Counted from the first letter of the stretch, positions 1 through 46,773 are shown. The stretch: 64,000 nucleotides of DNA from Octopus sinensis (GCF_006345805.1 NC_043000.1:111476001-111540000), one strand, 5' to 3'. The notes: generated by a model not told the origin, from the letters alone. Translations and numbers: made by a program.

Positions 1-149
1 TGGTTGGTGTTAGGAAGGGCATCCAGCTGTAGAAACTCTGCCAGATCAGATTGGAGTCTGGTGCAGCCATCTGGTTCACCAGACCTCAGTCAAATCGTCC
101 AACCCATGCCAGCATGGAAAGCGGACGTTAAATGATGATGATGATGATG
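1..149 (+). mobile_element. SINE-like family C, 3' end
   Basis: ..GCATGGAAAGCGGACGTTAAA(C)GATGATG tail. Confidence 0.8.
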
Positions 150-4150: not shown

Positions 4151-4466
4151 AAAAGCACCATTCGAGCGTGATTGTTACCAGCGTCGCCTTACTGGCATTT
4201 GTGCCGGTGAGCAGGTGACACGTAAAAAAAAAAAAAACACGATTTTTCCGTGGCCGTTGCCAGTACCGCCTGACTGGCACGTAAAAGCACCCACTACACT
4301 CTCGGAGTGGTTGGCACTAGGAAGGGCATCCAGCTGTAGAAACTCTGCCAGATCAAGATTGAAGCCTGGTGCAGCCTTCTGGCTTGCCAGTCCTAAGTCA
4401 AATCGACCAACCCATGACAGCATGGAAAGCGGACGTTAAACGATGATGATGATGATGATGATGATA
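4151..4466 (+). mobile_element. SINE-like family C
   Basis: Same 3' end with (GAT)n tail. Confidence 0.8.
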
Positions 4467-6824: not shown

Positions 6825-7025
6825 CATCTTCATCACATATCGTCTGTTTCCCATGCTGGCATGGGAAAGACGTAGTGGAACCGGTAGCCAGAAAGCCGCA
6901 CCAGGCTCCGGTCAGTTTTGACTTGGTTTCTATGACTGGATACCCTTCTCAATGCCAACCACTCCACAGAGTATGCTGGGTGCCTTTCATGTTCCACTGG
7001 CTCGGGTGCCTTTTACATGTTGTCT
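6825..7025 (-). mobile_element. SINE-like family C (diverged)
   Basis: CCATGCTGGCATGGG, TCTCAATGCCAACC. Confidence 0.65.
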
Positions 7026-7531
7026 TACCATTTTCAATTATGAATCTCACGTTTCTCTCTTTGATCAAAGGAAACATACCTGAAGCTTCAGTTTTTTGTT
7101 TAGGATTTCTGGTACCTAAACACCTTCAGGAAGTGGGACAAATTTGTAAGGCCAGGGGGTCACTGCTGCCCAAGGATGTTAGGACTAGGAAAACGAAATA
7201 CCAGGAATTCATCCTTGAGACTCTTCACATGTCAGTTAATAAACTGACTTGGTTACACACACACATGCACACACACAAGCAGATAGACAGGTAGACATGT
7301 TTATTTTTAACATTGGCACAAGAGCACCTGTTTTGAAAGAGAAAGAGAGGGTTTAGCCAATTAACCCCTCCCCTCCACCACCTGGAAGATTAAAAGGGCA
7401 ATGTGGTCTTTAGCAGGATTTGAACTCTGAATGTAAAGTGACATAACTAAATACTACAAAACATTTTTTTTTTTGTCCACCACTCCACCAGTCTGAAATA
7501 AATTTTGAGGAAATTAAATGAAGATCTTTAA

Positions 7532-7556
7532 ATGGCATCTGAAAATTTAAGTCAAG
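7532..7556 (+). CDS. Hydrolase gene, coding exon 1 (MASENLSQ)
   Basis: ATG at 7532; donor AAG|GTAAGA at 7557; phase 1 matches exon 2. A possible acceptor (CCAG) ending at 7491 suggests an upstream UTR exon. Confidence 0.65.
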
Positions 7557-7606
7557 GTAAGAAAGAACACCCACATAAGGTACATCCCAATTTCAGCAGT
7601 GAATAT

Positions 7607-7960
7607 TCATCATCACCACCATCATCATCACCACCATCATCATCATCATCATCATCATCATCATTTAACGTCCATTGTCCATGCTGGCATGGGTTGGACG
7701 GTTTGACCAGGCTGGCATGCTGGAAGTCCACACCAGGCTCCAGTCTGATTCAGCATGGTTTTTCTACAAGTTGATGCCCTTCCTAACACCAACCATTCCA
7801 AGAGTGTAATGCATACTTCTACATGCCACCGACACAAATGCCATTTGCATGAGACCAGGGTGTTTTTACATGCCACCGGCACGGGTGCCATTTGTGTGAC
7901 ACCAGTATCTGCCACGACTGCAATTTTGCTCGGCGTGATGGGTTGTCTTTTCAAGCACAA
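7607..7960 (-). mobile_element. SINE-like family C (intron 1)
   Basis: (CAT)n-TTTAACGTCC..CCATGCTGGCATGGGTTGGACG. Confidence 0.8.
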
Positions 7961-7999
7961 CATAATGCATTCCAAAGAAAAAAAAATCTGTTTAATTCA

Positions 8000-8165
8000 T
8001 TAACCCTTTAACGTTCAAACCAACCATATCAACCCAAATATTCCCTCCATTTTGTGTTCAAACCAGCCAGATCCAGCCTCTCACACCTATCCTACAACAC
8101 CATTCTACAGATAAACAAACACATCATCGATATCTCAAAGCTATGAGATAACCCATGATTAATTC
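8000..8165. mobile_element. piggyBac-like MITE fragment
   Basis: Starts TTAACCCTTT, typical of piggyBac-type termini; the second end was not identified. Confidence 0.35.
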
Positions 8166-8354
8166 CCTGACAGATCTTCTCGTTATGCAAGAGGTGGGTT
8201 TATTTGGTAACTTGCCCTTCCCCAAAGAATATTCAGTGTTAGATAACCCTCACCTCACCCTCAAACTTGCCCTTACATTGTAGTAGCTCCCCTGTCGAAT
8301 GCTGACCTGAAAATTGTCTTAAAACTGCAAAACCCTTTCGTCTTCTCTTTTCAG

Positions 8355-8498
8355 ATTCTCTGCCAGTCTCACCAACTGAAGCACCACCGATCTATATGAA
8401 GCAGTTTGATGATATTATTGTAAACTTTATGAAAGAACAAGGAATCCCAGGGGCTGCTGTGGCCCTAAGTTATAAGGGAGAGCAGATTTACAGACAAG
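8355..8498 (+). CDS. Hydrolase gene, exon 2 (..FDDIIVNFMKEQGIPGAAVALSYKGEQIYRQ)
   Basis: Acceptor tcttctcttttcag; donor AAG|GTCAG; IPGAAVA is typical of the N-terminus of the Beta-lactamase family. Confidence 0.9.
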
Positions 8499-9254
8499 GT
8501 CAGATCATGAGAACATTTTACAAGTAACACACACACACATAAGTTACTTACAAACATACACATATATAACCTACACACATACATATAAGTCAGACACACA
8601 TACATATACATATACATTAGTATTATGATCAGCCGATTGGCTGAATTATTAGAGTCAGTCAAGCATTGTAGAAAGTCCCGCATGGACTTTGTTTTGGCTC
8701 TTTATGTTCTGGGTTCAATTCCTGCCAATGTTAGCTATGCATTTTATCCCTTGGGAGATCAATAAAATAAAGCACCAATTGAGAACTGGTAGGGTAGTGG
8801 AGCAAAACCCTTGAGTAACCCCCTCCGGCTAAAATTGCTGGCCTTGTGCTAAAAATAAAGACTAACAATCTTTATTTTGGTCTTTATTAGAGACTAATGT
8901 CTTTATTCTGGTTGTTATAGCCACAAGGCCTGCAGAGGTTGTTGTGTGGTCAGGTGTGGTCTCCTGCCACTAGGACCATGTAACCTAGTAGAACTTACTG
9001 TTTGATGGCATACAACCAAGGGTGGACTGAGCCATTGGTCAATCAGGCACTGCCCAAGGGCCCGGAACTCTGAATGTTAATTCTACTAAAACATACATTC
9101 AAAAAGACCTGGTAAACAGTTATGCCTGGGGACCCTTAATATTCTCATACAACCCACTTTTTCTCCAAAAGTCTCTCTGAAAATCACACCAGATCCTATA
9201 TGTGAAGTTTGACCTCCCCTAAGCTTTAAGGCACCAAATAATTTTTTCTTGTTT

Positions 9255-9855
9255 ATTATTTACATTATTTACATTTGATGGATATTTGCCCTCATCTTGT
9301 TTCTTGTTAACACGTTTCGGCTGATATACTCTCCAGCCTTCATCATATGTCTTGGGGAAATTTCAAACCTAGGTTCTCATTCCTAGGGTATTTTTCAACG
9401 TTATTATTATTATTATTATTGTTATTATTATTAGACCAAAGACTGCAGTTGTGGTAGGTTATACAAAGGCGAGACATGCCGTCCCCTCAAAATAAGGGTA
9501 GAGTAACATCGTAAAGCTGTGACACGAGATGTTGAAAAATAGGGTATAGCTGATCATGTATGGAAAAATGGAGACCACCTCCCTCTGTGGGATGAAGTTA
9601 AAATAATAGACAGAGAACACCACTGGAAAATACGAAAACTAAAAGAAGCAGCACATATGCTAGGACACGACAACCACCTAAGCAGACCGAGTGCAGATAT
9701 GAGTAGCATATGGGAACCGGTATTAAGGAAGGATACAAAAATGTTGGGTTTATATGCCCTAAAATTCACTCTGTAATTGCCCACGGACATATGGTGTAGT
9801 GGTTAAGAGCGTGGGCTACTAGCCCCAAGATTCCGAGTTTGATTCCAAGCAGTGA

Positions 9856-9890
<35 letters not shown>

Positions 9891-10050
9891 TTAATAATGA
9901 TGTCAAAAAATAACTTAGGAATGAGAATCCTGGTTCGAAATTTCCCCAAATCACCTGAAACATTGTGTTAACGACAAACAAGATGAGGACAAATATCCGT
10001 CAAATATAAATATTGTAAATAATGTACATAATTCCTCATCTCTTAAATAT
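9255..10050 (+). mobile_element. Penelope-like fragment in intron 2: inverted pLTR, GIY-YIG remnant, tRNA-like head, pLTR
   Basis: CSCGRLYKGETCRPLKIRVE..IADHVW..RKLKEAAHM at 9445-9735; 9255-9430 is an inverted copy of 9860-10050. Confidence 0.8.
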
Positions 10051-10279
10051 AGAACTGTAATTTTTTCTTGAATATGCTCTGCTGAAATTGAGGTGCGTCT
10101 AATGCACCTGTATGTCTTTGATGCCATCAGATATGGTGTTGCAGGATTTGGGGGCTGGCTAATAATTAAACTATAGTTATTCCACAAAATTAAAAACGAA
10201 CCCTTTAAGAGGACAGATGAATCATTAGGGCCATTTTGTTACGTTTTTTGAAATTTTAAAAATATTTGTAATATTCCAG

Positions 10280-10429
10280 GTTATGGAATGGCAAGCCTCG
10301 ACCGAAAGGTCCACCCAGATTCTGTGTTCCGTATAGCAAGTATTAGTAAAACTTTAACAGCCATTGGCATTCTGGTTCTTTGGCAGCAAAAGAAGCTGGA
10401 ATTGTCTGCCAAAGTCTTTGGACCAAAAG
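10280..10429 (+). CDS. Hydrolase gene, exon 3 with catalytic SxxK (FRIASISKTLTA)
   Basis: Acceptor atattccag; donor AAG|GTAAGT; S-I-S-K encoded at 10339-10350. Confidence 0.93.
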
Positions 10430-10489
10430 GTAAGTCAGAATTGTGAAATACTCACTGATTGTTTTGTTTTTAATATTTTTCTTTTGTTA

Positions 10490-10700
10490 AGGTGGTGGAA
10501 CTGGCAGAAACGTTAGCATGTCGGGCGAAATACTTAGCGGTATTTCATCTGTTTTTACGTTCTGAGTTCAAATTCCACTGAGGTTGACTTTGCCTTTCAT
10601 CTTTTTGGGGTTGATAAATTAAGTACCAGTTGCATACTGGGGTCAATCTAATGGACTGCCCCACCTTCCCCAAAATTTCAGGCCTTGTGCCTAGAGTAGA
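10490..10700 (+). mobile_element. SINE family B (intron 3)
   Basis: GGCAGAAACGTTAGCATG..GTTCTGAGTTCAAATTCC; diverged copies also at 6580-6795, 8640-8850 and 16640-16785. Confidence 0.8.
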
Positions 10701-10884
10701 AAACGATATTTTTCTTTCGTCTTTTGTCTTTTACTTGTTTCAGTCATGGGACTGTGACCCTGCTGGGGCACTGCCTTCAATATTTAGTCAAATGAATTGA
10801 CTCCAGTACTTATTTTTTAAGCCTGGTATTTATCACACACACACACACACACACACAAATCATGCTTATCTGACTAGAGTCGGT

Positions 10885-11070
10885 GCCACACATGAAAAAA
10901 GCTGCCAGTCCACTTTGCAAAGTGGTTGGCATTAGGAAGGACATCATCCAGCCATAAAGACCATGCTAAACAGACATCAGGAATCAGCACAGCTCCCTGT
11001 GGGTTGTTGGTTCCTGTCAAACTGCCAAACCCATGCCAGAATGGGAAAAGGGACATTAAATGATGATGAT
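10885..11070 (+). mobile_element. SINE-like family C (diverged, intron 3)
   Basis: GTGGTTGGCATTAGGAAGG..CATTAAATGATGATG. Confidence 0.65.
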
Positions 11071-11104
11071 ATCTCTTTGTATTTATGTTTATATGTATCT
11101 ATGC

Positions 11105-11140
<36 letters not shown>

Positions 11141-11142
<2 letters not shown>

Positions 11143-11320
11143 TCATCATCATATCGTCCGCTTTCCATGCTAGCATGGGTTGGACAATTTTGACTGAGGA
11201 CTGGTGAACCAGATGGCTGCACCAGGCTCCAACCTTGATCTGGCAGAGTTTCTACAGCTGGATGCCCTTCCTAACGGCAACCGCTCCGAGAATGTAGTGA
11301 GTGCTTTTTTCGTGCCACAT
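11141..11320 (-). mobile_element. SINE-like family C (intron 3)
   Basis: (CAT)n..GTCCGCTTTCCATGCTAGCATGGG. Confidence 0.8.
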
Positions 11321-11324
11321 ACAT

Positions 11325-12001
11325 ATATGAGAGGTCAAAAATTATCCACATTTCTACCATAATATATCTTTATTATTGTTACACTGCCTTCAGCACATGC
11401 ATGCTTACAGTTGGTACTATTATAGTCATGTGACTGAAGTTTGAACCTGATTGCTCTATCTTTCTTTCTGGCTTTACAGTGTAAGCATGGCCGCTCCATT
11501 AGCAATGTGCAGCAAAGAAGAACAAAGAGCAGTGATGTGAGAGAGATGGTAATGGTGAAACGGTTCACCATTTACCATCTCTCAAGCTTGCTGAATCTTC
11601 TCGTCAGTGGTGGAGGTGGACGGGCGTCCTGCTCCCTCTTCGTGCACATTACGCTTGTCCGGCCACTTTTAAACTTCTCACTCCACTCATACACACTTCC
11701 ACACGGTAGTGTACTGTCCCTGTATTTGTACTAAAAGCCTCCTTTGAATTTCAGCACCTGACACACCTTCCGACCAGAGGAATCAGATCACTTCTCTTTG
11801 TTCTTCTTTGGTGCACGTTGCTATTGGAGCAGCCAGGCTTTACACTGTAAAGCCAGAAAGAAAAATGGCGTGATCACGCTCAAACTTCAGTCACATGACC
11901 ACAATAGTACCAACTGTAAGCATGCATGCGCTGAAGGCAGAGTGACAATAATAAAGATATGTTATGGTGAAAGTGCGGATAATTTTTGACTTCCCCTTGT
12001 A
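11325..12001. mobile_element. Fold-back mariner derivative (two 5' ends head to head)
   Basis: Arms 11334-11536 and 11787-11990; central palindrome 11541-11583; the minus strand encodes a mariner N-terminus (TKEEQR..FLWSEGVSGAEI..KFKSGRTS..GAGRPSTSTTDEKI). Confidence 0.85.
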
Positions 12002-12002
12002 T

Positions 12003-12046
<44 letters not shown>

Positions 12047-12054
<8 letters not shown>

Positions 12055-12225
12055 CAACAATTGAGGGTAAAATTAATTAATTATTAATCAATTTCACCTA
12101 GTATTCAGTATGTAAAGGGACCATTATAGGCGAATTCAAAATATTACATTATATATAAGGGCTTAGTAAAATAAGTGAAATTGATTAATAATTAATTAAT
12201 TTTACCCTCAATTGTTGAAATTATA
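12047..12225. repeat. Perfect 51-bp inverted repeat with a 77-bp spacer
   Basis: 12047-12097 is the exact reverse complement of 12175-12225. Confidence 0.9.
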
Positions 12226-12711
12226 ATTCATCTTTCTCTGCTAAATGCTGCGGTTTTCACCGTTAATACATGGTGTTTGTCAATTTTAACCCACGCTGGT
12301 GGAGAGGGGAGAGCAGAAATTCTTCGCTTGCATATTCGAATTTGATAGCACTTTTAGTTCGAGCAGAATTCTAGAGGTGATTAGAAGCCGAAAGGGTATG
12401 CTCCCGACTTTCAGTGTTCCCAAATCCGATTCAAGGAATTCTGAGCTGAAGAAAGAAATGTCGAATTGACTAATCTAGAAATGTACGTTCTCAAATAACC
12501 TTTGCACTTGATTTTTTAATGTTTTTTCCCCCATACTTTTGTGAGTTAGTTTAGGTAAACACTATCTGAGAGAGATCTTCTTTAAGTATTAGAAATGGCT
12601 GAAGAAATTTCTTTAGCTGCTATTTCTAATGAGTTCAGTATGTGGCAAAGTAATTTATTTTACTAAGCCCTTATATATAATATATATACATATATATATA
12701 TATAAGGTTTC

Positions 12712-12865
12712 CTTCGGTTCTCATCTACCAAATCCACTCACAAGGCTTTAACTGTCCCAAGGCCATATAGGAGAAGACACTTACTCAAAGTGGCATGCAG
12801 TGAAATTGAAACTGTAACCACATGGCTGGAAAGCCAACCTCTCACCACACATCCACGCCTGCACT
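12712..12865 (-). mobile_element. SINE family A, 5' part (head to head with 12898-13265)
   Basis: CTACCAAATCCACTCACAAGGCTTT. Confidence 0.7.
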
Positions 12866-12897
12866 TCTGAAGTTTCTAAAATAGATTTCCTTTGAAA

Positions 12898-13265
12898 GGC
12901 ACAGGTGAGACTGTGAGGTAAGAAGTTTGCTTCCCAGCCACATGGTCTCAAGTTCAGTCCCACTGCATGGCACCTTGGACAAACGTTTTTTACTATAGCT
13001 TCGGGTCAACCAAAGCCTTGTGAGTGGATTTGGTAGACGGAAACTGAAAGAAGCCCTTTATGTGTGTATGTCCCTCACCACTGCTTGACAACTGGTGTTG
13101 GTGTGTTTTTGTCCCCATGACTTAGCAGTTCAGCAAAAGAGACCGATAGAAAAAGTACCAGACTTAAAATTAAAGAAGTACTAGGGTCAAGTCTGTCAAC
13201 TAAAAATCCTTGAAGGTGGTGCTACAGCACGGCCACAGTCTAATGGCTGAAACAAGTAAAAGCTA
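12898..13265 (+). mobile_element. SINE family A, full length
   Basis: Head through ..GGCTGAAACAAGTAAAA. Confidence 0.8.
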
Positions 13266-13296
13266 AAAGATATTCTAATACCTTTTTTTGTTGCAG

Positions 13297-13512
13297 GTAT
13301 TTTGAACAATTATAAATCCACTTCTAAAGGAGATCATCGTCTCAACCAGATTACAGTGAAACATCTTTTGCAGCACAGCGCCGGATGGGATCGAGACCAA
13401 GTGGGCGACGCTGTCTTCTGGAACTTAGATAATATCTTCAAGAACAAGGAAATGTCTTCAGAAGATAAACTTTTACGTTTTATGATGAGCAAAAAATTAC
13501 AATTTACTCCAG
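13297..13512 (+). CDS. Hydrolase gene, exon 4 (ITVKHLLQHSAGWD..LQFTP)
   Basis: Acceptor tttttttgttgcag; donor CAG|GTAATT; LLxHxxG motif. Confidence 0.92.
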
Positions 13513-13598
13513 GTAATTACAATTTACCCCCAGGCAATTACAATTTACTCCAGGTAATTACAATTTACCCCCAGGTAATTACAATTTACCCACCGGCA
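13496..13598 (+). repeat. Five-copy 20/21-bp tandem repeat spanning the exon-4 donor
   Basis: Unit ATTACAATTTAC(T/CC)CCAGG(T/C)A; the last copy is diverged. Confidence 0.95.
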
Positions 13599-13674
13599 AT
13601 TTCTTGAAACAAACAAAAAATTGATTGGAATGGTTTTGTTTCTTTTTATTTTGCTAGACTCTCATTTTATGCTT

Positions 13675-13990
13675 CATCATCATCATAATCATCGTTTAAC
13701 GTCCGTTTTCCAAGTTGGCATGGGTTGGACGGTTTGACTGAGGACTGGCAAGCCAGGAGGCTGCACCAGGCTCCAATCTGATCTGGTACGGTTTCTACAG
13801 CTGGATGCCCTTCCTAACGCCAACCACTCAGAGAATGTAGTGGGTGCTTTTATGTGTCACCAGCATGGGAGCCAGTCAGACAGCATTGGCATCAGCCACG
13901 TTCAGATGGTGCTTTTTATGTGCCACTGGCACAGGACCCAGTTGGGACTGGCATCGACCATGTTCGGATTGTGCTTTTTACGTGCCACTG
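13675..13990 (-). mobile_element. SINE-like family C (intron 4)
   Basis: CGTTTAACGTCCGTTTTCCA..GGATGCCCTTCCTAACGCCAACC. Confidence 0.8.
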
Positions 13991-14403
13991 GCCAAAATCT
14001 TCTACATGTTTCCTTGATTGGGTAGAAATGATGACTAAACCATCCTTAAATTACAATGCTTTGTCAGCTAAGAAAAAGAAAGTCTCATGGAATAATTTAT
14101 TCTGAGACACAAAGAAAAAAAATGGAATGTGATGGTCCTGGCTGGATGGCTTTTGATCCTACTCGGCCAGAAATGGAGTTAAACAATTGATGCACAAACT
14201 GTAACTAATTTATATCTTTACTAACTTGTCAAGTTGTAGTTATCATCGTCATCATCATCATCAACAGCAGCAACAACAAAGGAATGCTCAAGATTAATTT
14301 GTTTAATTTCTCAACCTTTCATAAGTTCAAAAAATTTGATGGTTGAGGGGACAAACCTTGTGGACTGTTTACATTTTATTACTTTACAAGTCTTACTTTA
14401 CAG

Positions 14404-14573
14404 GTAAACGGCACAGTTATTCCAACCTGGGTTATTTGATTCTTGGTAAAGTTATTGAGAAAGTGGAACAGAAGCCATACACAGAATTCCTCAAAGAAAT
14501 TCTGCAGAATGTCAATATAACCAACATGACAACTGGACATAATAACACTTGTGGTGTTATTAGCAATGATGAG
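14404..14573 (+). CDS. Hydrolase gene, exon 5 with YxN (YSNLGYLILGKVIE)
   Basis: Acceptor cttactttacag; donor GAG|GTATGT; YSN at 14418-14426. Confidence 0.92.
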
Positions 14574-14689
14574 GTATGTAGTCTTGTCTTTAGTTGGAAT
14601 GGTAATTCCTCCATGGGGTCTTTCAAACATGAAGAAGGAATATACTCTGACTGTGTGAAGCTGAATATTTCTATAGCATTATATAAAGG

Positions 14690-14882
14690 CAGAGAACTGG
14701 CAGAAACGTTAGCATGCCGGACGAAATGCTTAGCAGTATTTCGTCTGTCTTTACATTCTAAGTTCAAATTCTGCTGAGGTCAACTTTGTCTTTCATCCTT
14801 TCGAGGGTCGATAAATTCAGTACCAGTTGCGTAACCCCCAACCTCCCCAAAGAAATTTCGGACTTTGTGCCTAGAGTAGAAA
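14690..14882 (+). mobile_element. SINE family B (intron 5)
   Basis: Shared head and core. Confidence 0.8.
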
Positions 14883-15248
14883 ATATGAAAAAGATGAGAT
14901 GGTCATTGCTGGGACGTCTTTGTTCATATTTCTGTTTGATCAGAACTGACCTGGAAATGAACAACTAAAACTATTCCTCCTTCTGCTACTATTATTACCA
15001 CTACCACCACCACCACCACCACCACCATTACTACTCTCTTCATCTCCTCATCTCTCTCTGCCCATCTTTTGCTCCACTTCCCCCTCTCTTTTTCTCATCC
15101 TCCTCCTCATATATCTCTCTTCTTCCTCTCTAACCACCACAGTCCACTCCTTCCTCCTGGGTTGGTTTGATGACAGCCTTAAACCTCTAAACTTTGTGAT
15201 TCTTTACCAAAATGTATAACCCTGTGTCTTTGTTCTTCTGTATTCCAG

Positions 15249-16526
15249 GTGAATTATTTCCACAAATCTTGGCTGGAACTGAGAAAACCCCAAACTTTCC
15301 AAGGATGGACACTTCCAAATTCGAGTCTGGTACAAATGGATGGAGCGGAATCGTATGGAGGCTGGGTGGCCAATGCCAGTGATGTACTCCAGTTATTCAA
15401 TTGTTTGTTTGAGAATCAGTCCAAACTGCTAGAAGGGGAAACCGTTCAAATGATGCTCAACCGTCCTGAATATGAGAATGGTGATGAATGGTATGGATTT
15501 GGCTTAGAGGTGGAAGATAATGGCTGTTCGTGGGGCCATACTGGAGCAATGGAGGGAACATCATGTACTGTGATGCATGATAAGTCTGGACTTACTTGGG
15601 TCTTGTTGTTTAATGCCTGGTCTAAAGACATGGACCTCAATGGGTTGATGAGGTACGGTCTCAGTGTGATTCCTAGCTTACCATTATGGCACGAAGGGAA
15701 GCCTCTCAGTGATTCTTCATTAAATATATCGACCGAAGATGGTAAACAAGTCGTTACCATTATAATTCCTCATGATCTCCTGCAGGCACATGTTGATATG
15801 ATGATGTCTTTGAGTTATAGCCTTCACTGGTTAAGCAGCCATCAACTCGGCAGCAAAACCTATTTTAACACAGTATGGCATAGGAGTAGTAGTAGTCATA
15901 GTAATGCTAACCAGTCGCTTGTGTGTCTTGATGTTTCGGTTGATAATGTGGATATTGTTGTAAGTAAACAATGTGACCTCGGTTTCTCTGTGAAACTATT
16001 AGAGACCTATTGTCATGAGGGCCACTTGAATTTTCTGATTGTGTTTGAAAATGTAAATGTTGTTTGTCAGAAGGTTTATACTCACCAAAGTCCAGAAGAA
16101 CATCTTGCTAGAATCAGTGAACTGAAGAAGAATGGATGGCATTTAACCATTCAGTCTTTGGTATCAATTGATGATTGCCTTGTGGTCTCTTCCGTTTATG
16201 CCAAAACAGAAGAGCCTGGCATTAAAACGGTGTCTTGGTTAGGCATCACTCTTGACAACTTCGTCTTTGAGCTGAAGAAACAGATCAACAACAAACTGAC
16301 ATTGATTTATGTTAAATTCTTCAACAATGGAGACAATTCCTTTGTTAGTGCCATCTGGAATTCCAAGCAGGAAAAGAATTATTGGCAAAGACATTCCGTA
16401 TCTCGTTATGGTTTCCTTTATGAAGTAAGGAAGGCTTCTGCAAAAAATCTCCATGTTGATTATGTTTCGTCCTATGTAGAAGACGGAGTTGTGTATTTTG
16501 CAGCTTTCTGGCCTTCTTTGGGATGA
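15249..16526 (+). CDS. Hydrolase gene, exon 6 (HTG motif plus five C-terminal repeats)
   Basis: Acceptor tctgtattccag; 425-codon ORF; YGGW, WYGFG and WGHTGAMEG (HTG at 15537-15545); TGA stop at 16524-16526. Confidence 0.93.
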   Translation: MNYFHKSWLELRKPQTFQGWTLPNSSLVQMDGAESYGGWVANASDVLQLFNCLFENQSKLLEGETVQMMLNRPEYENGDEWYGFGLEVEDNGCSWGHTGAMEGTSCTVMHDKSGLTWVLLFNAWSKDMDLNGLMRYGLSVIPSLPLWHEGKPLSDSSLNISTEDGKQVVTIIIPHDLLQAHVDMMMSLSYSLHWLSSHQLGSKTYFNTVWHRSSSSHSNANQSLVCLDVSVDNVDIVVSKQCDLGFSVKLLETYCHEGHLNFLIVFENVNVVCQKVYTHQSPEEHLARISELKKNGWHLTIQSLVSIDDCLVVSSVYAKTEEPGIKTVSWLGITLDNFVFELKKQINNKLTLIYVKFFNNGDNSFVSAIWNSKQEKNYWQRHSVSRYGFLYEVRKASAKNLHVDYVSSYVEDGVVYFAAFWPSLG

Positions 16527-17528
16527 AGAATTTACTGGGTTCCTTCTGGTTTATTGTTGTTGTGGTGGTACTGTCTGTCTCTTGAAGTCTTCAAGGTGAT
16601 ACACTGCCAGAATTGTTACCTGGACAAAATGCCCACCTGTAATTCTTCTGGTTGAGTTTGAATGCCACTAAAGGTCAACTTTACTCTTTAGCCTTTCAGG
16701 GTCAACAATGTACCAATGAACTACTGAGGTTGAGGGTATTGACTACCCTCTCCCCAATTGCTGCCTGGGGCTAAAATCTAAGACCCTATTACTGCAGACT
16801 TCAATGAGAATTTCATTTCCTGGTGATTCTTACAGTTTTTAGGATCTGTGAGGCAAAATACATTAACATGGTGTTATGTTATCTACCCTTTACCCAGGGG
16901 AAGAATTGAACCTGGTACTGCACTTTATTAATCATTTTGATACCAATCTGTCTAAGTCCACCATTTGTTTTGGTAGGAAACCTTTCATTTCAAAGTGTTC
17001 ATACATAAATGAAAATCTTCCATCATAATTTATGTCATCATGGTTTATTATCATAATTTATGTTATTATAATTTGTCATTATAATTTATGCTATATTTAT
17101 CTCATGGAAGATATAGTGTGTGTGTGTGTGTGTGAGAGAGGGAGAGACAGAGAGAGAGAGAGAGATAGCGAGGGAGTGAAGGTAATGATTTGGGAGGGGA
17201 AGTGTTGGTCAGTTGAAGGATCTGATTGTTGGTGGGTTAATAGCTTTCTTTGGGGGTTTAAAGAATGGGGAGCATCGGGAGTGGTAGGATGAGAAATAGA
17301 CTGAAAGTGGTTGTTGTCTCCCTTGCACACATCCCACCCCCAGCCACACACTCCCTTTCCTCTCATTATCCCCCCCTCTCGGCCTTATTCTGCTGTGAGA
17401 CCCTACAAAGACTTCAGTCCAGCTCGCAAATGATTATTTATTGTGCCTTATACATATACATACATACATATATATATATATGCATGTGTGTGTGTGTATA
17501 TATATATACATGTATGTATATATATATA

Positions 17529-21664: not shown

Positions 21665-22145
21665 TAGGGGACATTGACCCCAAAAAGATGAACAGGAAAG
21701 TTGATCTCGGAAGGATCTGAACTCAGAACGTAAAGAACCGGAAGAAATGCTGTTAAGCATTCTGTCCGCCAAGCTAACGATACTGCCAGCTCGCCGCCTT
21801 TATTATTTGACACAAGACCTGAAATTTTGAGGGAGGGGGCTGGTCGATTATATCGAACCCCAGCACTCAACTGGTGCTTATTTCATCGATCCCGGGGGTG
21901 ATGAAGGGGTAAATTCGACACCGGCAGAATTTGAACTCAGCTTTCTTGAATAAGCCAAAAGCCCAAAACTTTGTAAAGGGGTGTGGCCGATTAAATTGAC
22001 CCCAGTGTCCAACTGCTGCTTATTTCACCGATCCCGAAAGGATGAAAGGCAAAATCGACCTCGGCGGAATTTGAACTCAGAACGTAAAGACCCGTAAGAA
22101 ATGCCGCGGCCCGGCATGTGAACGATTGTACCAGTTCGCAGCGTT
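21665..22145 (-). mobile_element. Cluster of SINE family B copies
   Basis: Repeated GAATTTGAACTCAG heads on -; another copy at 22548-22695. Confidence 0.7.
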
Positions 22146-22146
22146 G

Positions 22147-22238
22147 ACGATGATGATGATGATGATGAGGAGGAGGAGGAGGAGGAGGGGGAAGATGGTG
22201 ATGAGGATGATGATGACGACGACGACGACGACGACGAC

Positions 22239-22328
<90 letters not shown>

Positions 22329-22494
22329 AATGATGATGATGATGACGTTGATGATGGTGATGAAGATGAGGAGGAGGGGGAGGAAAATGGTGATGATGAT
22401 GATGACGACGATGATGATGATGATGATGACGATGATGATGATGATGAAGATGACGATGACGATGATGATGAGGAGGTGAGGATGGTGATAATGG

Positions 22495-22527
<33 letters not shown>
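22147..22527. repeat. Compound trinucleotide microsatellite (GAT/GAC/GAG)n
   Basis: Direct inspection. Confidence 0.95.
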
Positions 22528-22528
<1 letters not shown>

Positions 22529-22837
22529 CCTTTCCTCTATAGGCAAAAGGCCTGGAATTTTGTGGGAGGGGGATAGCTGGTCACTTCGAGCCCTGTGCTC
22601 AATTGGTAATTTGTTTTATCGACTTCGAAAAGTTGAGAGGCGAAGTCGAACTTAGCGTAATTTGAACTCAGGACCATAAAGATGGACGAAATGCCGGGAT
22701 TAAACAAGAACAGCAACAACAAACCTTGTTCTTTATTAACCTGATTACAATATTTTTAGTTTTGGGTAACAAAAAAAAAAATGAAAAATAGAGTGGCCTC
22801 CCCTGGATCATCATCATCCTGACATTTTGGGGAAAGG

Positions 22838-24975: not shown

Positions 24976-25639
24976 TGTTGCTGCTGTTGATGATAATGAT
25001 GTTGTTGTGACGGTGGTATTGAACTTCAGCTTAATTCTGCTGACTAAAGCTTCTTCAACCGTGACCATCCCATCTATTTCCTATATTTAGAAGGCCCAGG
25101 GACCACATATGATCTGATGTACTCTCTTTTAAGATGGTAGGGTGTGATTTAGAGGGAATTTGGCTGCTATTTCCAGCAGATTGGACTTACAATTAGAAAC
25201 GACCTCGTTGGATTGTTCCCTAAAGTGGAAAGAGAATGGCAGGGTGGGGGGAGGATGAGAGAGAGAGAGAGAGAGTGTGTGTGTGTGTGACAAGCTCCAC
25301 ACCAGTGAATAATGACTGAAGACTGTTGTTCTGTCAACAGGTTCGAAGAGGAATGAAGGAAAGAAAGAAGCGGGAAAGAAAGGGTCCATGAGCCTGCAAC
25401 GGAGAGCTGTCGGGGTTTCCTGGGGAACAGAGGTTTCTAGGGGACATTGGGAGATGATTCTCTCTGGGACATTTATTGTCCTTTGTTATATTTACGCACA
25501 CACGCACACACACCACCACCAGCACCACCACCACAATACACGTGCGCGGACATTATCTTATACATTTGCATACAACTTCATTCATACAAAACAAAAACAC
25601 ACACTTTCATTTGCTTGATAATTGCCTTTCGTCATTCTG

Positions 25640-25651
25640 CCACATATATAT

Positions 25652-25699
<48 letters not shown>

Positions 25700-25781
25700 G
25701 TATAATGTATACATACATACATATATATATATAATATATATATATACATAAATACAGACATACATACATATACATACATAC

Positions 25782-25830
<49 letters not shown>

Positions 25831-25874
25831 ATATATATATGCTTATATATTATATTATGCTTATGTACATTATA

Positions 25875-25964
<90 letters not shown>

Positions 25965-26030
25965 AATATATATGTATATATATAGATATATATTATATAT
26001 ACATATTATACATATATACACATACATACA

Positions 26031-26062
<32 letters not shown>

Positions 26063-26549
26063 GTGATGCATATTAGTGCATTTTGTATGTATCTGTATGA
26101 ATTTGAGAGAGCTAGTATGTGTGTGTGTGTTTTTGTGTGTGTGTGTGTGTCTGTGTGCGTGTGTGTCTTTATGCGTCTGCTTCGTGAAAACTTCTGCCCA
26201 ACCGAACAAAGTGTGGCATTTTAAAGTTTATGCTGACATTTCTTCAGCTTTGAGTCATCCTCGTTGGTGTGGCGAAGGGTGGGGGCTGGAGGGAAGGGGG
26301 GATAATGGGGAAGGGGTGATAATGGGGAAGGGATGAGAAAGAGAGGAGGGCAGTGAGAGAGACAGAGTTGAGAGAGGGGGGAGCAAGAGGGAGAGAAATG
26401 GGGGAAATACTTTTCAAAAGGTAAACATGGAAAGATAAAAAGTTAGCATAACACACGCACACATATGTGCATACAAATGTATCTACATGCGTGCATGAAT
26501 ATACATACATGAATATATATACACACACACACACCACACACATATAATT

Positions 26550-26593
<44 letters not shown>

Positions 26594-27300
26594 TATATAT
26601 ACACATAACACACACACATACATGTATATATACATTAAAAAACAATATGTATATATTTAATAAATATGCATATATTTGTGTGTGTATGTATGTATAGATA
26701 TATACATATACATATATATATATACACATATATACATACATACATATATACAAATATATATTCAGCCATGAAACGATCGTAGTGTTATATTAATTATCTT
26801 TTTTAATAATTTTGATATATATTTAAATAATATAAATTAATTAATCTTATGTATTGACTTAAGTTTTTCATTGTATGATTTGCCTAATAGTGGTTTTATC
26901 TCTAATTTAATATAATATAATATTTTACTATAAAATTGGATTCAATCCTAAATCTGATTTTTCCCTGTAAGTTTGGATTTATTCCCTAATATTTTATTAT
27001 ATATATATATATATATGTGAAATATATTTATATATATGTATGTATATGTGTCTATATATATATGTATATGTATATATCTATACATACATACACACACCTA
27101 CACACATATAGTTACACATACATTCATACATACATTCATACATACATACATGCATACATACATACATACATACATACATACATACATACATGTATGCATA
27201 CATACATACGTACGTACATACATACATACATACATACATACATACATACATACATACATACATACATACATACATACATACATACATACACACAGATATG
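25640..27300. repeat. Large compound microsatellite field (CA, TA, TACA) with a purine-rich spacer
   Basis: Direct inspection. Confidence 0.9.
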
Positions 27301-27545
27301 GATAAAATCTGATATGCATCAGCCATTACAATAAATTCGGATACAATTTGTTCTTTATCAGCGCTGCATTGGAAGTTTCTTGTAGACTAAAAATAAATGG
27401 TTTGTAGTAAATCATTGAAGATCATATTCTTTAAATATTTTGATACTGTCTAGAACAAGAGAGTCTTGAAGACAAACTTGCAGATAAAATACAGAAGTCC
27501 TGAATATGTTTCGGAAAAATACGATCTTCACTATGGTGTCAACAA

Positions 27546-27562
27546 TATCTATCTATCTATCA

Positions 27563-27646
<84 letters not shown>

Positions 27647-27741
27647 GTCTCTCTGTATGTCTGTCTGTCTGTCTGTTTATCTGTTTGTCTGTCTACATAC
27701 ACACACACATATATATACATCCATCCCTTTCTCTATTTCTA

Positions 27742-27824
<83 letters not shown>

Positions 27825-27825
27825 T
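27546..27825. repeat. (TCTA)n/(TCTG)n microsatellite
   Basis: Direct inspection. Confidence 0.95.
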
Positions 27826-28129
27826 GTCAATAAATATGCTATACCATAATGAAGGAAGCTGTTTTACAGTTTGTTTGGAATATGTAGCTTTTTAAAAAAG
27901 AAGACATTAAAGCCTACGCTGTCTATAAAATTCTTAAAAATACTAATTTTAGCATTTTTTTTTATCAAAATGTAGTTTTCAAACTTCTTTCATTGGGTTG
28001 GCAAAGAAGTGATTTCGATTTTTTAGTGTGATAAAAACTCATTTTTTTAAACACAAATAATGAACTTTAATCCTTTATATGTTTTTCATGGCAACTTCAT
28101 GATTCTGCGCTCATAGCACTTCTGATCTT

Positions 28130-28310
28130 TATCAGCCAAAAACTGAAGCTTTTGGTCCGTCCTTACGTTCTGAGTTCAAATTCCGCTGAGGTCGATTTGC
28201 ATTTCATTCTTTCGGGGTGGATGAATTAAGAGGCAGTGAAACACTGGGGGTTGATGTAATTAACTTGTCCCCTCCGCCAAAATTTCAGGCTTTGTACCTA
28301 CTTGTAGAAG
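28130..28310 (+). mobile_element. SINE family B
   Basis: Shared core; other copies at 37495-37680 (-), 54008-54165 (-) and 63760-63900 (+). Confidence 0.7.
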
Positions 28311-28369
28311 GGATTATTATTAATATAATTATTATTGGTGATGTGACTGAGGTTCGGTCTTATTCCTGG

Positions 28370-28635
28370 CTGAATTCATTCGGGTAGCAGGTTATTAACT
28401 GTAACCTCAGGTACCCTCAAGCTTTCAATAGTCTTTCAAGTGCTTAAGACGCTCCTGATAATCTTTCCTGTCTCTAAGAGGCAAACTTTCTGTAGAAGCT
28501 CTACAAGACATTCTATTCCAATCTCCTTCAACCATTTCTCTATATCTCTACTCACAGTTCCCAATGCGCCAATTATTATAGGAACAACCTCCACAGATTT
28601 CAGACTCCAATTCCTTGCAACTTTAAATTTCAAGT
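28370..28635 (-). mobile_element. R4/Dong-like (RLE-type) non-LTR 3' remnant
   Basis: WSLKSVEVVPIIIGALGTV..LLQKVCLLETGKIIRSVL matches the restriction-like endonuclease C-terminus (V.PvviGalG...lQk..llgta.ilR). Confidence 0.75.
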
Positions 28636-28962
28636 TCTACCAATCCTACTAGTACAATGGGCGAAATGGTGACAGAATGGTAGAATTGGTGGAGCAACGA
28701 AGAGAATGACTTTGCGGTATTTAGTAGTTTTTATTTTGAGTTAAAATTCCAGTAACGTCAACCTTTTCGTTACGGAATCGAGAAAATAATTAACACTCAA
28801 TCGAACGTTCCTTCAAAGGAAAAGAAGGCTATCCTTCGGGGATGGTATATCAAAACTAAAACATACACAGACAAAAAAATCACATAAACATAAGCCATCC
28901 GCATGACAAAAATATATATATATATATATATGTCGTATATATGTATATATATTATATATATA

Positions 28963-29004
<42 letters not shown>

Positions 29005-29029
29005 TTATATATAATATATATGTATGTGT

Positions 29030-29237
29030 GTATTGTGTGTCTGTGTTTGTCCCTCTAGCATTGCTTGACAACCGATGCTGGTGTGTTTATGTCCCCTTAC
29101 TTAGCGGTTCGACAAAAGAGACAGATAGAATAAGACTGGGCTTACAAAAAGAATAAGTCCCGGGGTCGAGTTGCTCGATTAAAGGCGGTGCTCCAGCATG
29201 GCCGCAGTCAAATGACTGAAACAAGTAAAAGAGTAAA
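29030..29237 (+). mobile_element. SINE family A, 3' half
   Basis: GCTTGACAACCGATGCTGGTGTG..GACTGAAACAAGTAAAA. Confidence 0.8.
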
Positions 29238-29859
29238 AGTGTATTAAAGAAATGGAATTCTGCTACGGAAGCTGCCGAACAAATAGTTTCAGTTTTGATA
29301 TACTATCTCCGTAGGATCGCCGAAAAGAAAAATAAATTTGAGATTTTTGTTAGATTTCACTGAGGATGGAGAAAGTGATAATAACGGTGATTGACTAAAC
29401 GGGATGGATATTAAGCTACGCTTCTTTAGGTTCTGCGTTCGAATTTCACCGACGTCAGCCTATCGTTATTAAACCCATTGTTGTTCGGAGACCTCGATCG
29501 TATAATCCACATCCAGATATGGCCATTCCATCATTTAGTCTGACATTTTACATCTAGATCAACATTACTGGCCGTGTGACTTCCTATTTCAATATAGCGG
29601 GGTGTAATTTGAGAGAAATTTGGTTGCTGTTTCTAGTATGCCTGGTGATCACTGGGTGACCCCTCGTTCTACCAAGCTGGTTGTGAAGTTAACATAATCA
29701 ACTGTTGACTTCTCCAGAAACGTTTTTGATTCTGGCTAAATTAGAAACCCTTATTGCATTCAACTGTTTTTTTCTATTTTCAAATCTACTTAACCACTTA
29801 AGTAACTCATTAATTACACATCTTAACTGAAGGGCTTCAAAATTATACTCGTATGCATG

Positions 29860-29980
29860 TAGTTATGTATGTCTGTATACGTATGTAATGTATGTATATA
29901 TGTATGTATACGTATGTGTGTATGTATGTATACGTATGTGTGTATGTGTGCGTGCGTGTGTGCGTGCGTGTGTGCCTGTG

Positions 29981-30012
<32 letters not shown>

Positions 30013-46772: not shown

Positions 46773-46773
46773 G

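What the first reader, a model, noticed from the sequence alone, without database searches (positions are those of the whole stretch)
7532..16526. Intron-containing, bacterial-architecture beta-lactamase-like hydrolase with an intact catalytic triad in a cephalopod
Seen: the six exons give a 660-aa protein with SISK, YSN and HTG in the order of serine beta-lactamase/PBP-fold enzymes. Its N-terminus is polar (MASENLSQDSLPVSPTEAPP), with no hydrophobic signal peptide and no Arg-rich mitochondrial leader. Established: vertebrate LACTB is mitochondrial and lacks such C-terminal repeats, while beta-lactamase domains combined with BTRD1 repeats are described mainly from bacteria. Inference: this is a cytosolic, probably active peptidase/esterase of possibly horizontal origin. 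It may act on D-amino-acid peptides, peptidoglycan fragments or beta-lactam-like natural products (immunity or detoxification), and it seems uncharacterised in molluscs.
Basis: partly seen in the sequence, partly recalled or inferred. Interest (0 to 1): 0.75.

Follow-up and report, generated by a model that had tools for sequence, protein, structure and literature searches.

The report
Conserved animal serine hydrolase, not HGT
The six-exon octopus gene is real and encodes an apparently active, intracellular beta-lactamase-fold serine hydrolase joined to a five-repeat barrel, but it is an old animal gene shared with other molluscs, annelids, brachiopods and stony corals, not a recent bacterial import.

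Summary
Six GT/AG exons (7532-16526, + strand) splice into a 660-aa protein identical to NCBI's Octopus sinensis LOC115210556 isoform X1. SISK, YSN and HTG occur in the order typical of S12/DD-peptidase enzymes, and the protein has no signal peptide.

The C-terminal 265 residues form five strand-helix-strand-strand repeats. Their only significant PDB match is the N-domain of a fungal polyglycine hydrolase (7tpu). This is therefore the polyglycine-hydrolase/planctomycete domain pair, but with the domain order reversed and no secretion signal.

Full-length orthologues exist in cephalopods, bivalves, gastropods, a chiton, a brachiopod, annelids and stony corals. Four introns sit at the same codon and phase in octopus, scallop, Lingula and a coral. 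Animal sequences form one clade (99/94), and every prokaryotic sequence lies on the other side of a well-supported branch. Octopus versus Argonauta gives dN/dS of about 0.1.

A cephalopod-specific or recent horizontal transfer is refuted. A very ancient bacterial origin cannot be excluded. The substrate is unknown. I found no paper describing this animal family.

The parts
7532..7556 (+). Coding exon 1 (Met1 to the first base of codon 9); donor GT at 7557
   Evidence: The start and N-terminal peptide are conserved in Argonauta (MAAENIDEV...), which has an intron at the same CDS offset of 25.
8355..8498 (+). Coding exon 2 (residues 9-57), the start of the catalytic domain
   Evidence: The phase-1 intron after CDS nt 169 is shared with scallop, chiton, Lingula and coral (alignment column 180).
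10280..10429 (+). Coding exon 3 (residues 57-107), carrying the nucleophile motif S77-I-S-K80 at 10339-10350
   Evidence: R74, A76, S77, I78, S79 and K80 are invariant in 22 orthologues. The downstream intron (column 231, phase 1) is shared with scallop, Lingula and coral.
13297..13512 (+). Coding exon 4 (residues 107-179), carrying the subfamily motif H133-S-A-G-W-D-R-D140 at 13374-13397
   Evidence: H133, S134, G136, W137 and D138 are invariant. A similar motif appears in the 7tpu alignment (HSAGYDR) and in planctomycete relatives (HTGGWDR).
14404..14573 (+). Coding exon 5 (residues 179-235), carrying Y184-S-N186 at 14418-14426
   Evidence: Y184 and N186 are invariant. The flanking introns (column 317 phase 1, column 374 phase 0) are shared by all five animal loci examined.
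15249..16526 (+). Coding exon 6 (residues 236-660 plus the stop codon). It holds the rest of the catalytic domain, including H332-T-G334 at 15537-15545, and the whole C-terminal domain.
   Evidence: H332 and G334 are invariant.
15723..16514 (+). C-terminal five-repeat barrel (residues 394-657). The strand-helix-strand-strand repeats lie at 15747-15884, 15915-16049, 16068-16205, 16227-16361 and 16380-16514.
   Evidence: AF2 models: whole protein pLDDT 83 and pTM 0.84; this domain alone pLDDT 90.4 and pTM 0.88. Foldseek finds one significant PDB hit, 7tpu_A (E 2.9e-5, probability 1.00, TM 0.70 over 262 columns). Pfam BTRD1 matches the last repeat. An HMM of this domain finds the N-terminal domains of bacterial relatives (E 1e-27).
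7557..15248 (+). Five introns (798, 1781, 2867, 891 and 675 nt) filled with interspersed repeats
   Evidence: One search gives the boundaries. One search shows repeat families shared between the introns and the flanking DNA (for example 308-484, 7643-7819 and 13674-13850), which marks this as native host genome.

Best explanation
This is a vertically inherited animal gene for an intracellular two-domain serine hydrolase.

Residues ~20-375 form a beta-lactamase/DD-peptidase fold (Pfam PF00144, MEROPS S12 type) with all three catalytic motifs. By analogy with the family, Ser77 attacks a scissile amide or ester bond, assisted by Lys80 and Tyr184. The strand carrying His332-Thr-Gly positions the substrate and helps form the oxyanion hole. 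An acyl-enzyme then forms and is hydrolysed.

Residues ~394-657 form a barrel of five strand-helix-strand-strand repeats. This is the same fold as the N-domain of fungal polyglycine hydrolases and of planctomycete 'serine hydrolases'. It most likely acts as a binding platform for a substrate or partner.

Compared with those secreted relatives, the animal protein has the two domains in the opposite order and has lost the secretion signal. It probably acts on a cytosolic peptide, amide or ester rather than on beta-lactams.

Shown here: gene structure, domains, fold, conservation, purifying selection, phylogeny and intron sharing. Inferred: catalytic competence, cytosolic location and the binding role of the barrel. 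Unknown: the substrate.
For: - Gene model and identity to the NCBI protein.
- Catalytic domain: Pfam PF00144 at 179 bits. Foldseek TM is 0.75-0.80 (normalised to target length) to R61 DD-peptidase and FmtA-like protein, and 0.64-0.72 to LACTB.
- Invariant S77/K80, Y184/N186 and H332/G334 in 22 orthologues.
- Barrel: five repeats in confident AF2 models. The sole significant PDB match is 7tpu, and its paper describes five EHEE repeats of about 44 aa forming a barrel (PMC9912923). BTRD1 is detected in 18 of 22 orthologues. Sequence-level homology to bacterial N-terminal domains is shown.
- Best PDB sequence hit for the catalytic domain is also 7tpu (E 2.4e-21).
- Vertical descent: orthologues in four phyla. 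Four introns are identical in column and phase in octopus, Pecten, Lingula and Pocillopora, and three of them in a chiton. The animal clade has 99/94 support and molluscs 100/98. The species-tree arrangement is not rejected (AU p 0.27).
- Function retained: dN/dS 0.10 against Argonauta, 0.07 in the catalytic domain and 0.12 in the barrel.
- No leader peptide in mollusc and coral orthologues, whereas the bacterial relatives have one.
- A 2136-bp coral-like contig carries the whole 684-aa ORF without interruption, as expected of a spliced transcript.
Against: - No enzymatic, expression or localisation data exist for any member.
- I found no octopus transcript in the collections.
- Absence of a signal peptide was judged from hydrophobicity and charge only. 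The Owenia homologue does carry a leader.
- dS is near saturation (about 1.8), so the dN/dS value is approximate.
- The only characterised enzyme with this domain pair differs in domain order and in its third motif (Gly replaced by Phe), so its activity cannot simply be transferred.
- Corals group with molluscs rather than outside the lophotrochozoans in the free tree (97/93). This is not the species tree, although the AU test tolerates the species tree.
Confidence: 0.75

Rival explanations
1. Recent horizontal transfer: a bacterial beta-lactamase/BTRD1 gene entered the cephalopod lineage and then gained introns.
For: The closest non-animal sequences by score are prokaryotic, at 31-36% identity over the catalytic domain. 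The PF00144+PF17660 pairing is common in bacteria.
Against: - Full-length orthologues occur in bivalves, gastropods, a chiton, Lingula, annelids and stony corals.
- Four intron positions and phases are shared with a coral and a brachiopod.
- The animal sequences form one clade, with cephalopods nested inside molluscs.
- The introns carry host interspersed repeats.
- Domain order is opposite to that of the planctomycete proteins.
Confidence: 0.02
2. Ancient horizontal or endosymbiotic transfer: the gene came from a bacterium into an early animal or pre-animal eukaryote. It was then inherited vertically and lost in many lineages. This concerns origin only and is compatible with the functional explanation.
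For: - Prokaryotic homologues are abundant and diverse: Planctomycetota, Bacteroidota, Acidobacteriota, Chloroflexota, Verrucomicrobiota and Bathyarchaeia.
- Animal distribution is patchy. No deuterostome, ecdysozoan or sponge appears among the best hits.
- Peitsaro et al. 2008 argue for a bacterial origin of the other animal PBP-like lineages (PMC2266909).
Against: - No donor group emerges. All prokaryotic rows lie on the far side of a 100/97 branch.
- The two closest outgroups are metagenome sequences of unknown origin. P0133 lies on a gene-sparse, eukaryote-like contig, and the P0130 ORF lacks about 75 residues at the start of the catalytic domain.
- The one bacterial protein with the animal domain order is not near the animals.
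- The search tools list only the top hits, so absence from other eukaryotes is not established.
Confidence: 0.35
3. It is a true beta-lactamase that detoxifies beta-lactam natural products.
For: The fold and motifs belong to the class C/S12 superfamily.
Against: - The NCBIfam class C beta-lactamase model scores 61.8 bits against a cutoff of 415, and the alignment covers only residues 25-218.
- The third motif is HTG as in DD-peptidases, not the KTG of class C enzymes (my own knowledge).
- The nearest characterised relative, polyglycine hydrolase, has no nitrocefin activity (PMC9912923).
- The protein is apparently cytosolic.
Confidence: 0.05
4. It is the octopus orthologue of mitochondrial LACTB.
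For: LACTB structures match the catalytic domain by fold (TM 0.64-0.72) and weakly by sequence (E 1e-16).
Against: - The N-terminus is acidic, with no Arg-rich leader.
- LACTB scores below 7tpu, Flp, alkaline D-peptidase and the Pyrococcus PBP-related protein (2qmi), and far below the bacterial relatives.
- LACTB matched only the catalytic domain in the fold search, and the barrel-only model found 7tpu as its only significant PDB match.
Confidence: 0.02
5. It is a catalytically dead pseudoenzyme or a decaying gene.
For: No activity data exist. The loops at residues 138-146 and 242-263 near the active site are modelled with low confidence.
Against: The ORF is intact. All catalytic residues are invariant across four phyla, and dN/dS is about 0.1 in both domains.
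Confidence: 0.04

Closest known systems
Fungal polyglycine hydrolases / chitinase-modifying proteins (Fvan-cmp, PDB 7tpu; Bz-cmp, Es-cmp)
   Same: They have the same two building blocks: a beta-lactamase-fold serine hydrolase domain and a five-repeat EHEE barrel (Pfam PF17660). 7tpu is the best PDB sequence match for the catalytic domain (E 2.4e-21). It is the only significant structural match for the barrel (TM 0.70). The HSAG(W/Y)DR motif is shared.
   Different: - Domain order is reversed: barrel then catalytic in the fungal enzyme, catalytic then barrel here.
- The fungal enzymes are secreted and glycosylated, whereas the octopus protein has no leader.
- Fvan-cmp has Phe in place of the Gly of the third motif, whereas the octopus protein keeps H-T-G.
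- Sequence similarity to 7tpu covers only residues 24-222.
- Gly-Gly cleavage of a plant chitinase linker has no obvious counterpart in an animal cytosol.
Planctomycete and other bacterial 'serine hydrolase / PBP4' proteins with N-terminal BTRD1 repeats (e.g. Gimesia fumaroli P0084, G. aquarii P0132)
   Same: They combine PF17660 and PF00144. Identity in the catalytic domain is 33-34%. The repeat domains are homologous at sequence level (E 1e-27).
   Different: The repeats are N-terminal and preceded by a signal peptide. They lie on the prokaryotic side of the tree. None is characterised.
Streptomyces R61 DD-peptidase, Bacillus alkaline D-peptidase and D-stereospecific amidohydrolases (MEROPS S12)
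   Same: The fold is the same (TM 0.72-0.76). The SxxK ... YxN ... HxG motif pattern and spacing are the same, and the sequence alignments span the whole catalytic domain.
   Different: They are single-domain secreted bacterial enzymes acting on D-Ala-D-Ala or D-aromatic peptides. They have no barrel domain and are only about 20-23% identical.
LACTB and the other animal PBP-like lineages of Peitsaro et al. 2008 (LACTB, LACTB-like 1, LACTB-like 2, esterase-like)
   Same: They are animal proteins of the same superfamily with conserved catalytic serine motifs and a patchy distribution shaped by gene loss (PMC2266909).
   Different: LACTB is mitochondrial and forms filaments. It is much more distant in sequence than the bacterial relatives are. 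That study sampled no molluscs, annelids, brachiopods or cnidarians. No named member of those lineages appeared in the named hit lists. The exhaustive search returns no names, so only the 20 of its hits that I looked up could be checked. This suggests a separate lineage, but I could not test it directly.

Membership tests
Pfam PF00144 / MEROPS S12-type beta-lactamase-fold serine hydrolases | Profile match above the curated threshold | tested here: met
   179.4 bits against a gathering score of 27, residues 26-362. All 22 orthologues match.
Pfam PF00144 / MEROPS S12-type beta-lactamase-fold serine hydrolases | Three active-site motifs in order: SxxK, YxN, (H/K)xG | tested here: met
   S77-I-S-K80, Y184-S-N186 and H332-T-G334. 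They are invariant across the animal family.
Pfam PF00144 / MEROPS S12-type beta-lactamase-fold serine hydrolases | Alpha/beta/alpha penicillin-binding fold | tested here: met
   AF2 model with pTM 0.84. Foldseek probability is 1.00 with TM 0.72-0.80 to R61, Flp, AmpC and D-peptidases.
Pfam PF00144 / MEROPS S12-type beta-lactamase-fold serine hydrolases | Serine-dependent acyl-enzyme hydrolysis | not testable with these tools
   Needs recombinant protein and a Ser77Ala control.
Polyglycine hydrolase (chitinase-modifying protein) family | Five-repeat EHEE barrel domain (PF17660) plus a beta-lactamase-fold domain in one chain | tested here: met
   with the description in PMC9912923.
Polyglycine hydrolase (chitinase-modifying protein) family | Barrel N-terminal and catalytic domain C-terminal | tested here: not met
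   The order is reversed: catalytic 20-375, barrel 394-657.
Polyglycine hydrolase (chitinase-modifying protein) family | Secreted protein with a signal peptide | tested here: not met
   No hydrophobic leader in octopus or in the other mollusc and coral orthologues.
Polyglycine hydrolase (chitinase-modifying protein) family | Altered third motif (Gly replaced by Phe) | tested here: not met
   The octopus protein keeps H-T-G with an invariant Gly334. The Fvan-cmp feature is described.
Polyglycine hydrolase (chitinase-modifying protein) family | [quoted passage not shown] | not testable with these tools
   Needs a biochemical assay.
Class C (AmpC-type) beta-lactamase | Match to the NCBIfam class C model above its cutoff | tested here: not met
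   NF033085 scores 61.8 bits against a cutoff of 415, with a partial alignment over residues 25-218.
LACTB orthologue group | Mitochondrial import sequence, and LACTB as the closest characterised relative | tested here: not met
   The N-terminus is acidic. LACTB ranks below 7tpu, Flp, alkaline D-peptidase, the Pyrococcus PBP-related protein and a D-Ala-D-Ala carboxypeptidase.
Recently horizontally acquired bacterial gene | Restricted to one host lineage and nested within a donor bacterial clade | tested here: not met
   The family is present in four animal phyla. The animal clade is separate from all prokaryotic rows.
Recently horizontally acquired bacterial gene | Introns absent or lineage-specific | tested here: not met
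   Four introns are shared in column and phase with Pecten, Lingula and Pocillopora. All five are shared with Argonauta.

The most novel reading that the evidence does not exclude
This family may be a fifth, so far undescribed animal lineage of penicillin-binding-protein-like enzymes. It would be the intracellular, domain-swapped animal counterpart of fungal polyglycine hydrolases. In this reading the barrel docks a specific protein or peptide, and the S12 domain cuts an unusual bond, such as a glycine-rich linker or a bond next to a D-amino acid. The family would have been kept only in lophotrochozoans and stony corals and lost in ecdysozoans and deuterostomes. The frequent fusion of the closest bacterial catalytic domains to Amidohydro_3 domains hints at a link to D-amino-acid peptide metabolism. 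To my knowledge, Amidohydro_3 includes the D-aminoacylases.
Probability: 0.2. Interest if true: 0.6.

Novelty: new variant of a known kind. Interest (0 to 1): 0.35.

Why it matters
If the enzyme is active, it would define an uncharacterised, strongly conserved animal hydrolase family. Its only studied relative is a fungal protease with a very unusual specificity (Gly-Gly bonds). It would add a lineage to the short list of penicillin-binding-protein descendants kept by animals. It would also offer a natural experiment in domain-order permutation of the catalytic and barrel pair.

It does not bear on antibiotic resistance, and it is not an example of recent bacterium-to-animal gene transfer. The main practical lesson is that 'bacterial-looking domain pair in an animal' was not evidence of HGT here. 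Intron sharing across phyla settled that question.

Tried and rejected
- Fold search with the full-length model was dominated by the catalytic domain, and 7tpu was not in the top 50. A separate model of the C-terminal domain was needed.
- The word-indexed search with the C-terminal region alone found only octopus, Argonauta and one fragment. It says nothing about distribution.
- Two very high-scoring hits in the exhaustive search (P0121, P0124) were tandem duplications of the catalytic domain, with no barrel. P0124 sits on a gene-dense, prokaryote-like contig; P0121's contig was not examined. They are not close relatives.
- I asked whether a bacterial protein with the animal domain order could be the donor. 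The Nitrospirales protein P0140 groups with Bacteroidota sequences, far from the animals.
- Corals grouping with molluscs could suggest animal-to-animal transfer or paralogy. The AU test does not reject the species-tree arrangement (p 0.27), so I did not pursue this.
- Searching the PDB with only the C-terminal half of the catalytic domain, to compare substrate-binding residues with R61, gave no significant alignment. I make no claim about carboxylate-binding residues.
- Literature searches for the animal family (beta-lactamase + HGT + mollusc; BTRD1; beta-lactamase-like + invertebrate + LACTB) returned nothing relevant.
- I could not obtain LACTBL1 or the 'esterase-like' animal sequences with the available tools, so their relationship to this family was not tested directly.
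- No octopus transcript contig was found. The protein is recorded on one genomic contig only.

Full report
**1. The observation**

Three-frame translation and splice-site inspection of 7400-16700 give six + strand exons: 7532-7556, 8355-8498, 10280-10429, 13297-13512, 14404-14573 and 15249-16526.
- Every internal boundary is AG...GT.
- The joined CDS is 1983 nt and encodes 660 aa beginning MASENLSQDSLPVSPTEAPP.
- The protein is identical over its whole length to NCBI 'uncharacterized protein LOC115210556 isoform X1 [Octopus sinensis]', recorded on a 164.8-Mb contig.
- SISK (residues 77-80), YSN (184-186) and HTG (332-334) map to 10339-10350, 14418-14426 and 15537-15545.

**2. The domains**

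Catalytic domain:
- Pfam finds PF00144 Beta-lactamase at residues 26-362 (E 1.4e-52) and one copy of PF17660 at 614-656 (E 3.3e-6). Pfam now calls PF17660 'Polyglycine hydrolase-like, structural repeat'.
- NCBIfam models for AmpH, class C beta-lactamases, PBP4B and D-aminopeptidase all match only partially and far below their cutoffs. None of those equivalogs applies.
- The best PDB match by sequence is 7tpu, the Fusarium vanettenii polyglycine hydrolase (E 2.4e-21). It is followed by S. aureus Flp, Bacillus alkaline D-peptidase, the Pyrococcus PBP homologue, R61 DD-peptidase and LACTB.
- An AlphaFold2 model built on 22 orthologues is confident (pLDDT 83, pTM 0.84). Its catalytic domain superposes on R61, Flp, AmpC, D-peptidases and LACTB.

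C-terminal domain:
- In the model, residues 394-657 form five consecutive strand-helix-strand-strand units.
- Modelled alone, this domain reaches pLDDT 90.4 and pTM 0.88.
- Its only significant PDB match is 7tpu_A: E 2.9e-5, probability 1.00, TM 0.70 over 262 columns.
- The 7tpu paper describes that enzyme's N-domain as five quasi-identical EHEE repeats of about 44 residues forming a barrel. The fold was new to the PDB and its function is unknown (PMC9912923).
- An HMM of the animal C-terminal domain also finds the N-terminal domains of bacterial relatives at E 1e-27 to 1e-13. The homology is therefore visible in sequence as well as in structure.

**3. Architecture compared with bacteria and fungi**

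- In Gimesia and related bacterial proteins, five BTRD1 repeats come first, behind a hydrophobic leader, and the catalytic domain is C-terminal.
- The metagenome sequence P0133 has the same layout. The 7tpu paper describes the same domain order in Fvan-cmp and says these enzymes are secreted.
- The animal proteins have the opposite order.
- In molluscs and corals there is no leader. N-termini are acidic, and the highest 10-residue hydrophobicity in the first 40 residues is at most 1.2. The bacterial proteins score at least 2.5.
- One Nitrospirales MAG protein (P0140) has the catalytic domain followed by three repeats. It sits among Bacteroidota sequences in the tree.

'Bacterial architecture' is therefore right about the domain pair and wrong about the arrangement.

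**4. Distribution and descent**

Distribution:
- Full-length relatives at 29-71% identity occur in Argonauta, many bivalves, gastropods, a chiton, Lingula, the annelids Owenia and Dimorphilus, and the stony corals Oculina, Pocillopora and Montipora.
- No deuterostome, ecdysozoan or sponge protein appears in the named hit lists or among the 20 exhaustive-search hits that I looked up. The exhaustive search itself returns no names. The tools list only the best 120-150 hits, so this is absence from the top of the list, not proof of absence.

Introns:
- I fetched five genomic loci and mapped their introns onto the protein alignment.
- Introns at alignment columns 180 (phase 1), 231 (phase 1), 317 (phase 1) and 374 (phase 0) are shared by octopus, Pecten, Lingula and Pocillopora.
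- The chiton lacks only the intron at column 231.
- Argonauta shares all five octopus introns at identical CDS offsets.
- Shared intron positions between a cnidarian and lophotrochozoans mean the gene already had these introns in their common ancestor.

Tree:
- A maximum-likelihood tree of 98 catalytic domains (IQ-TREE, LG+C20+F+G4 by PMSF) puts all animal sequences in one clade (99/94). Within it, molluscs have 100/98 support and corals 100/100.
- Two metagenome sequences of unknown origin are successive sisters to the animals: P0130 (animal domain order) and P0133 (N-terminal repeats, on a gene-sparse eukaryote-like contig).
- Every prokaryotic sequence lies beyond a 100/97 branch.
- Corals join molluscs rather than sitting outside the lophotrochozoans (97/93). 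An AU test does not reject the species-tree arrangement (p 0.27).

Host context:
- The introns and flanks carry the same interspersed repeat families, as expected for native host DNA.

A recent or cephalopod-specific transfer is refuted. An ancient bacterial origin, as proposed for other animal PBP-like proteins (PMC2266909), is neither shown nor excluded.

**5. Is it functional?**

- The catalytic residues, and a subfamily motif HSxGWD(R/F)D that is also present in 7tpu and the planctomycete proteins, are invariant in 22 orthologues.
- Octopus versus Argonauta gives dN/dS of 0.10: 0.07 in the catalytic domain and 0.12 in the barrel. dS is near saturation, so these values are approximate.
- A 2136-bp coral-like contig carries the whole ORF uninterrupted, whereas the one coral gene examined (Pocillopora) has four introns. 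This fits a spliced transcript.
- I found no octopus transcript.

**6. Mechanism**

Inferred from the family, not tested:
- Ser77 is the nucleophile, Lys80 and Tyr184 act as general bases, and the HTG strand contributes to substrate alignment.
- The enzyme keeps the Gly of the third motif that Fvan-cmp has replaced with Phe. It looks more like a conventional S12 peptidase or amidase than like the fungal enzyme.
- Fvan-cmp lacks nitrocefin activity, and the class C model fits poorly. Beta-lactam hydrolysis is therefore unlikely.
- The barrel is most plausibly a binding module.
- Many of the closest bacterial catalytic domains are fused to Amidohydro_3/Amidohydro_1 domains. To my knowledge that family includes D-aminoacylases. 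This is a weak hint towards D-amino-acid peptide metabolism and nothing more.

**7. Comparison with what is known, and novelty**

- The protein belongs to the PF00144/S12 superfamily. All sequence and fold criteria are met.
- It is not a polyglycine hydrolase in the strict sense: domain order, secretion and third motif all differ.
- It is not a class C beta-lactamase and not LACTB.
- The 2008 survey of animal PBP-like proteins defined four lineages from vertebrates, nematodes, an echinoderm, a flatworm, a tunicate and Dictyostelium. It sampled none of the phyla that carry this family.
- Those lineages do not appear among the named hits or the looked-up part of the exhaustive search, while bacterial sequences do. 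This suggests a separate lineage, but I could not fetch those proteins to test it.
- I found no paper on the animal family.
- I rate it a new variant of a known kind. The gene itself is already in public databases as an uncharacterised protein with these Pfam domains.

**8. Verdict**

An intact, probably intracellular hydrolase is supported. Recent HGT and a strictly 'bacterial' architecture are not.
- Interest is moderate: a conserved orphan enzyme family with an unusual relative, but no surprising biology has been demonstrated.

Noticed in passing
window 1-149, 308-495, 4275-4464, 6883-6966, 7643-7830, 11189-11318, 13674-13861; also 218-299 and 12897-12978: Several families of short interspersed repeats (about 80-180 nt, 60-91% alike, in both orientations) are scattered through the introns and the upstream flank of the gene. 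They look like host SINE-type elements.
   Followed up: partly
window 11331-11484 and 11840-11993: A 154-nt inverted repeat (88% complementary, 355 nt apart) lies inside intron 3. It may be a foldback or MITE-like insertion.
   Followed up: no
window 54378-55919 (-) and 55810-56982 (+): A reverse-transcriptase ORF (RVT_1, E 1.9e-31) lies on the minus strand. An endonuclease-like ORF (Exo_endo_phos_2, E 1.1e-5) lies on the plus strand. They overlap head to head, so these are probably two LINE fragments or a rearranged element rather than one intact retrotransposon.
   Followed up: partly
window 22025-22546; 25600-31000; 40000-47000: There are long microsatellite and low-complexity tracts: a trinucleotide run that reads as poly-Ser, TA/TATC-type repeats, GC as low as 26-30%, and strong strand skew between 40 and 44 kb.
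   Followed up: no
P0008, P0009, P0014 (Haliotis); P0028, P0031, P0035 (heterobranch gastropods): Gastropod orthologues carry an insertion of about 250 residues or more between the catalytic domain and the barrel, and their barrel repeats are more diverged.
   Followed up: no
P0126 (Owenia fusiformis), P0127 (Dimorphilus gyrociliatus): The Owenia homologue has a hydrophobic signal-peptide-like N-terminus, unlike the mollusc and coral proteins. The Dimorphilus protein is 1105 aa and has a weak ricin-B lectin hit in its C-terminal extension.
   Followed up: partly
L001 1-987 (Pocillopora meandrina): The coral orthologue lies directly downstream of a gene with an arylesterase/paraoxonase-type domain (PF01731). 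I did not check whether this neighbourhood is conserved.
   Followed up: no
P0057, P0072, P0082, P0107, P0109, P0117, P0119, P0276, P0281-P0283, P0287: Many of the closest bacterial catalytic domains are C-terminal fusions to an Amidohydro_3/Amidohydro_1 domain, giving proteins of about 950 aa. Others carry a PF18962 domain.
   Followed up: partly
L086 (JGI metagenome contig, 3097 bp) and P0130: The two sequences closest to the animal clade come from unidentified organisms. P0133 sits alone on a contig with long non-coding flanks that contain an internal repeat, which looks eukaryotic. P0130 has the animal domain order and low-complexity inserts.
   Followed up: partly
tree: Stony corals group with molluscs (97/93), inside rather than outside the lophotrochozoan sequences. 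The AU test tolerates the species tree (p 0.27), so this may be a long-branch effect of the annelid and brachiopod sequences.
   Followed up: yes
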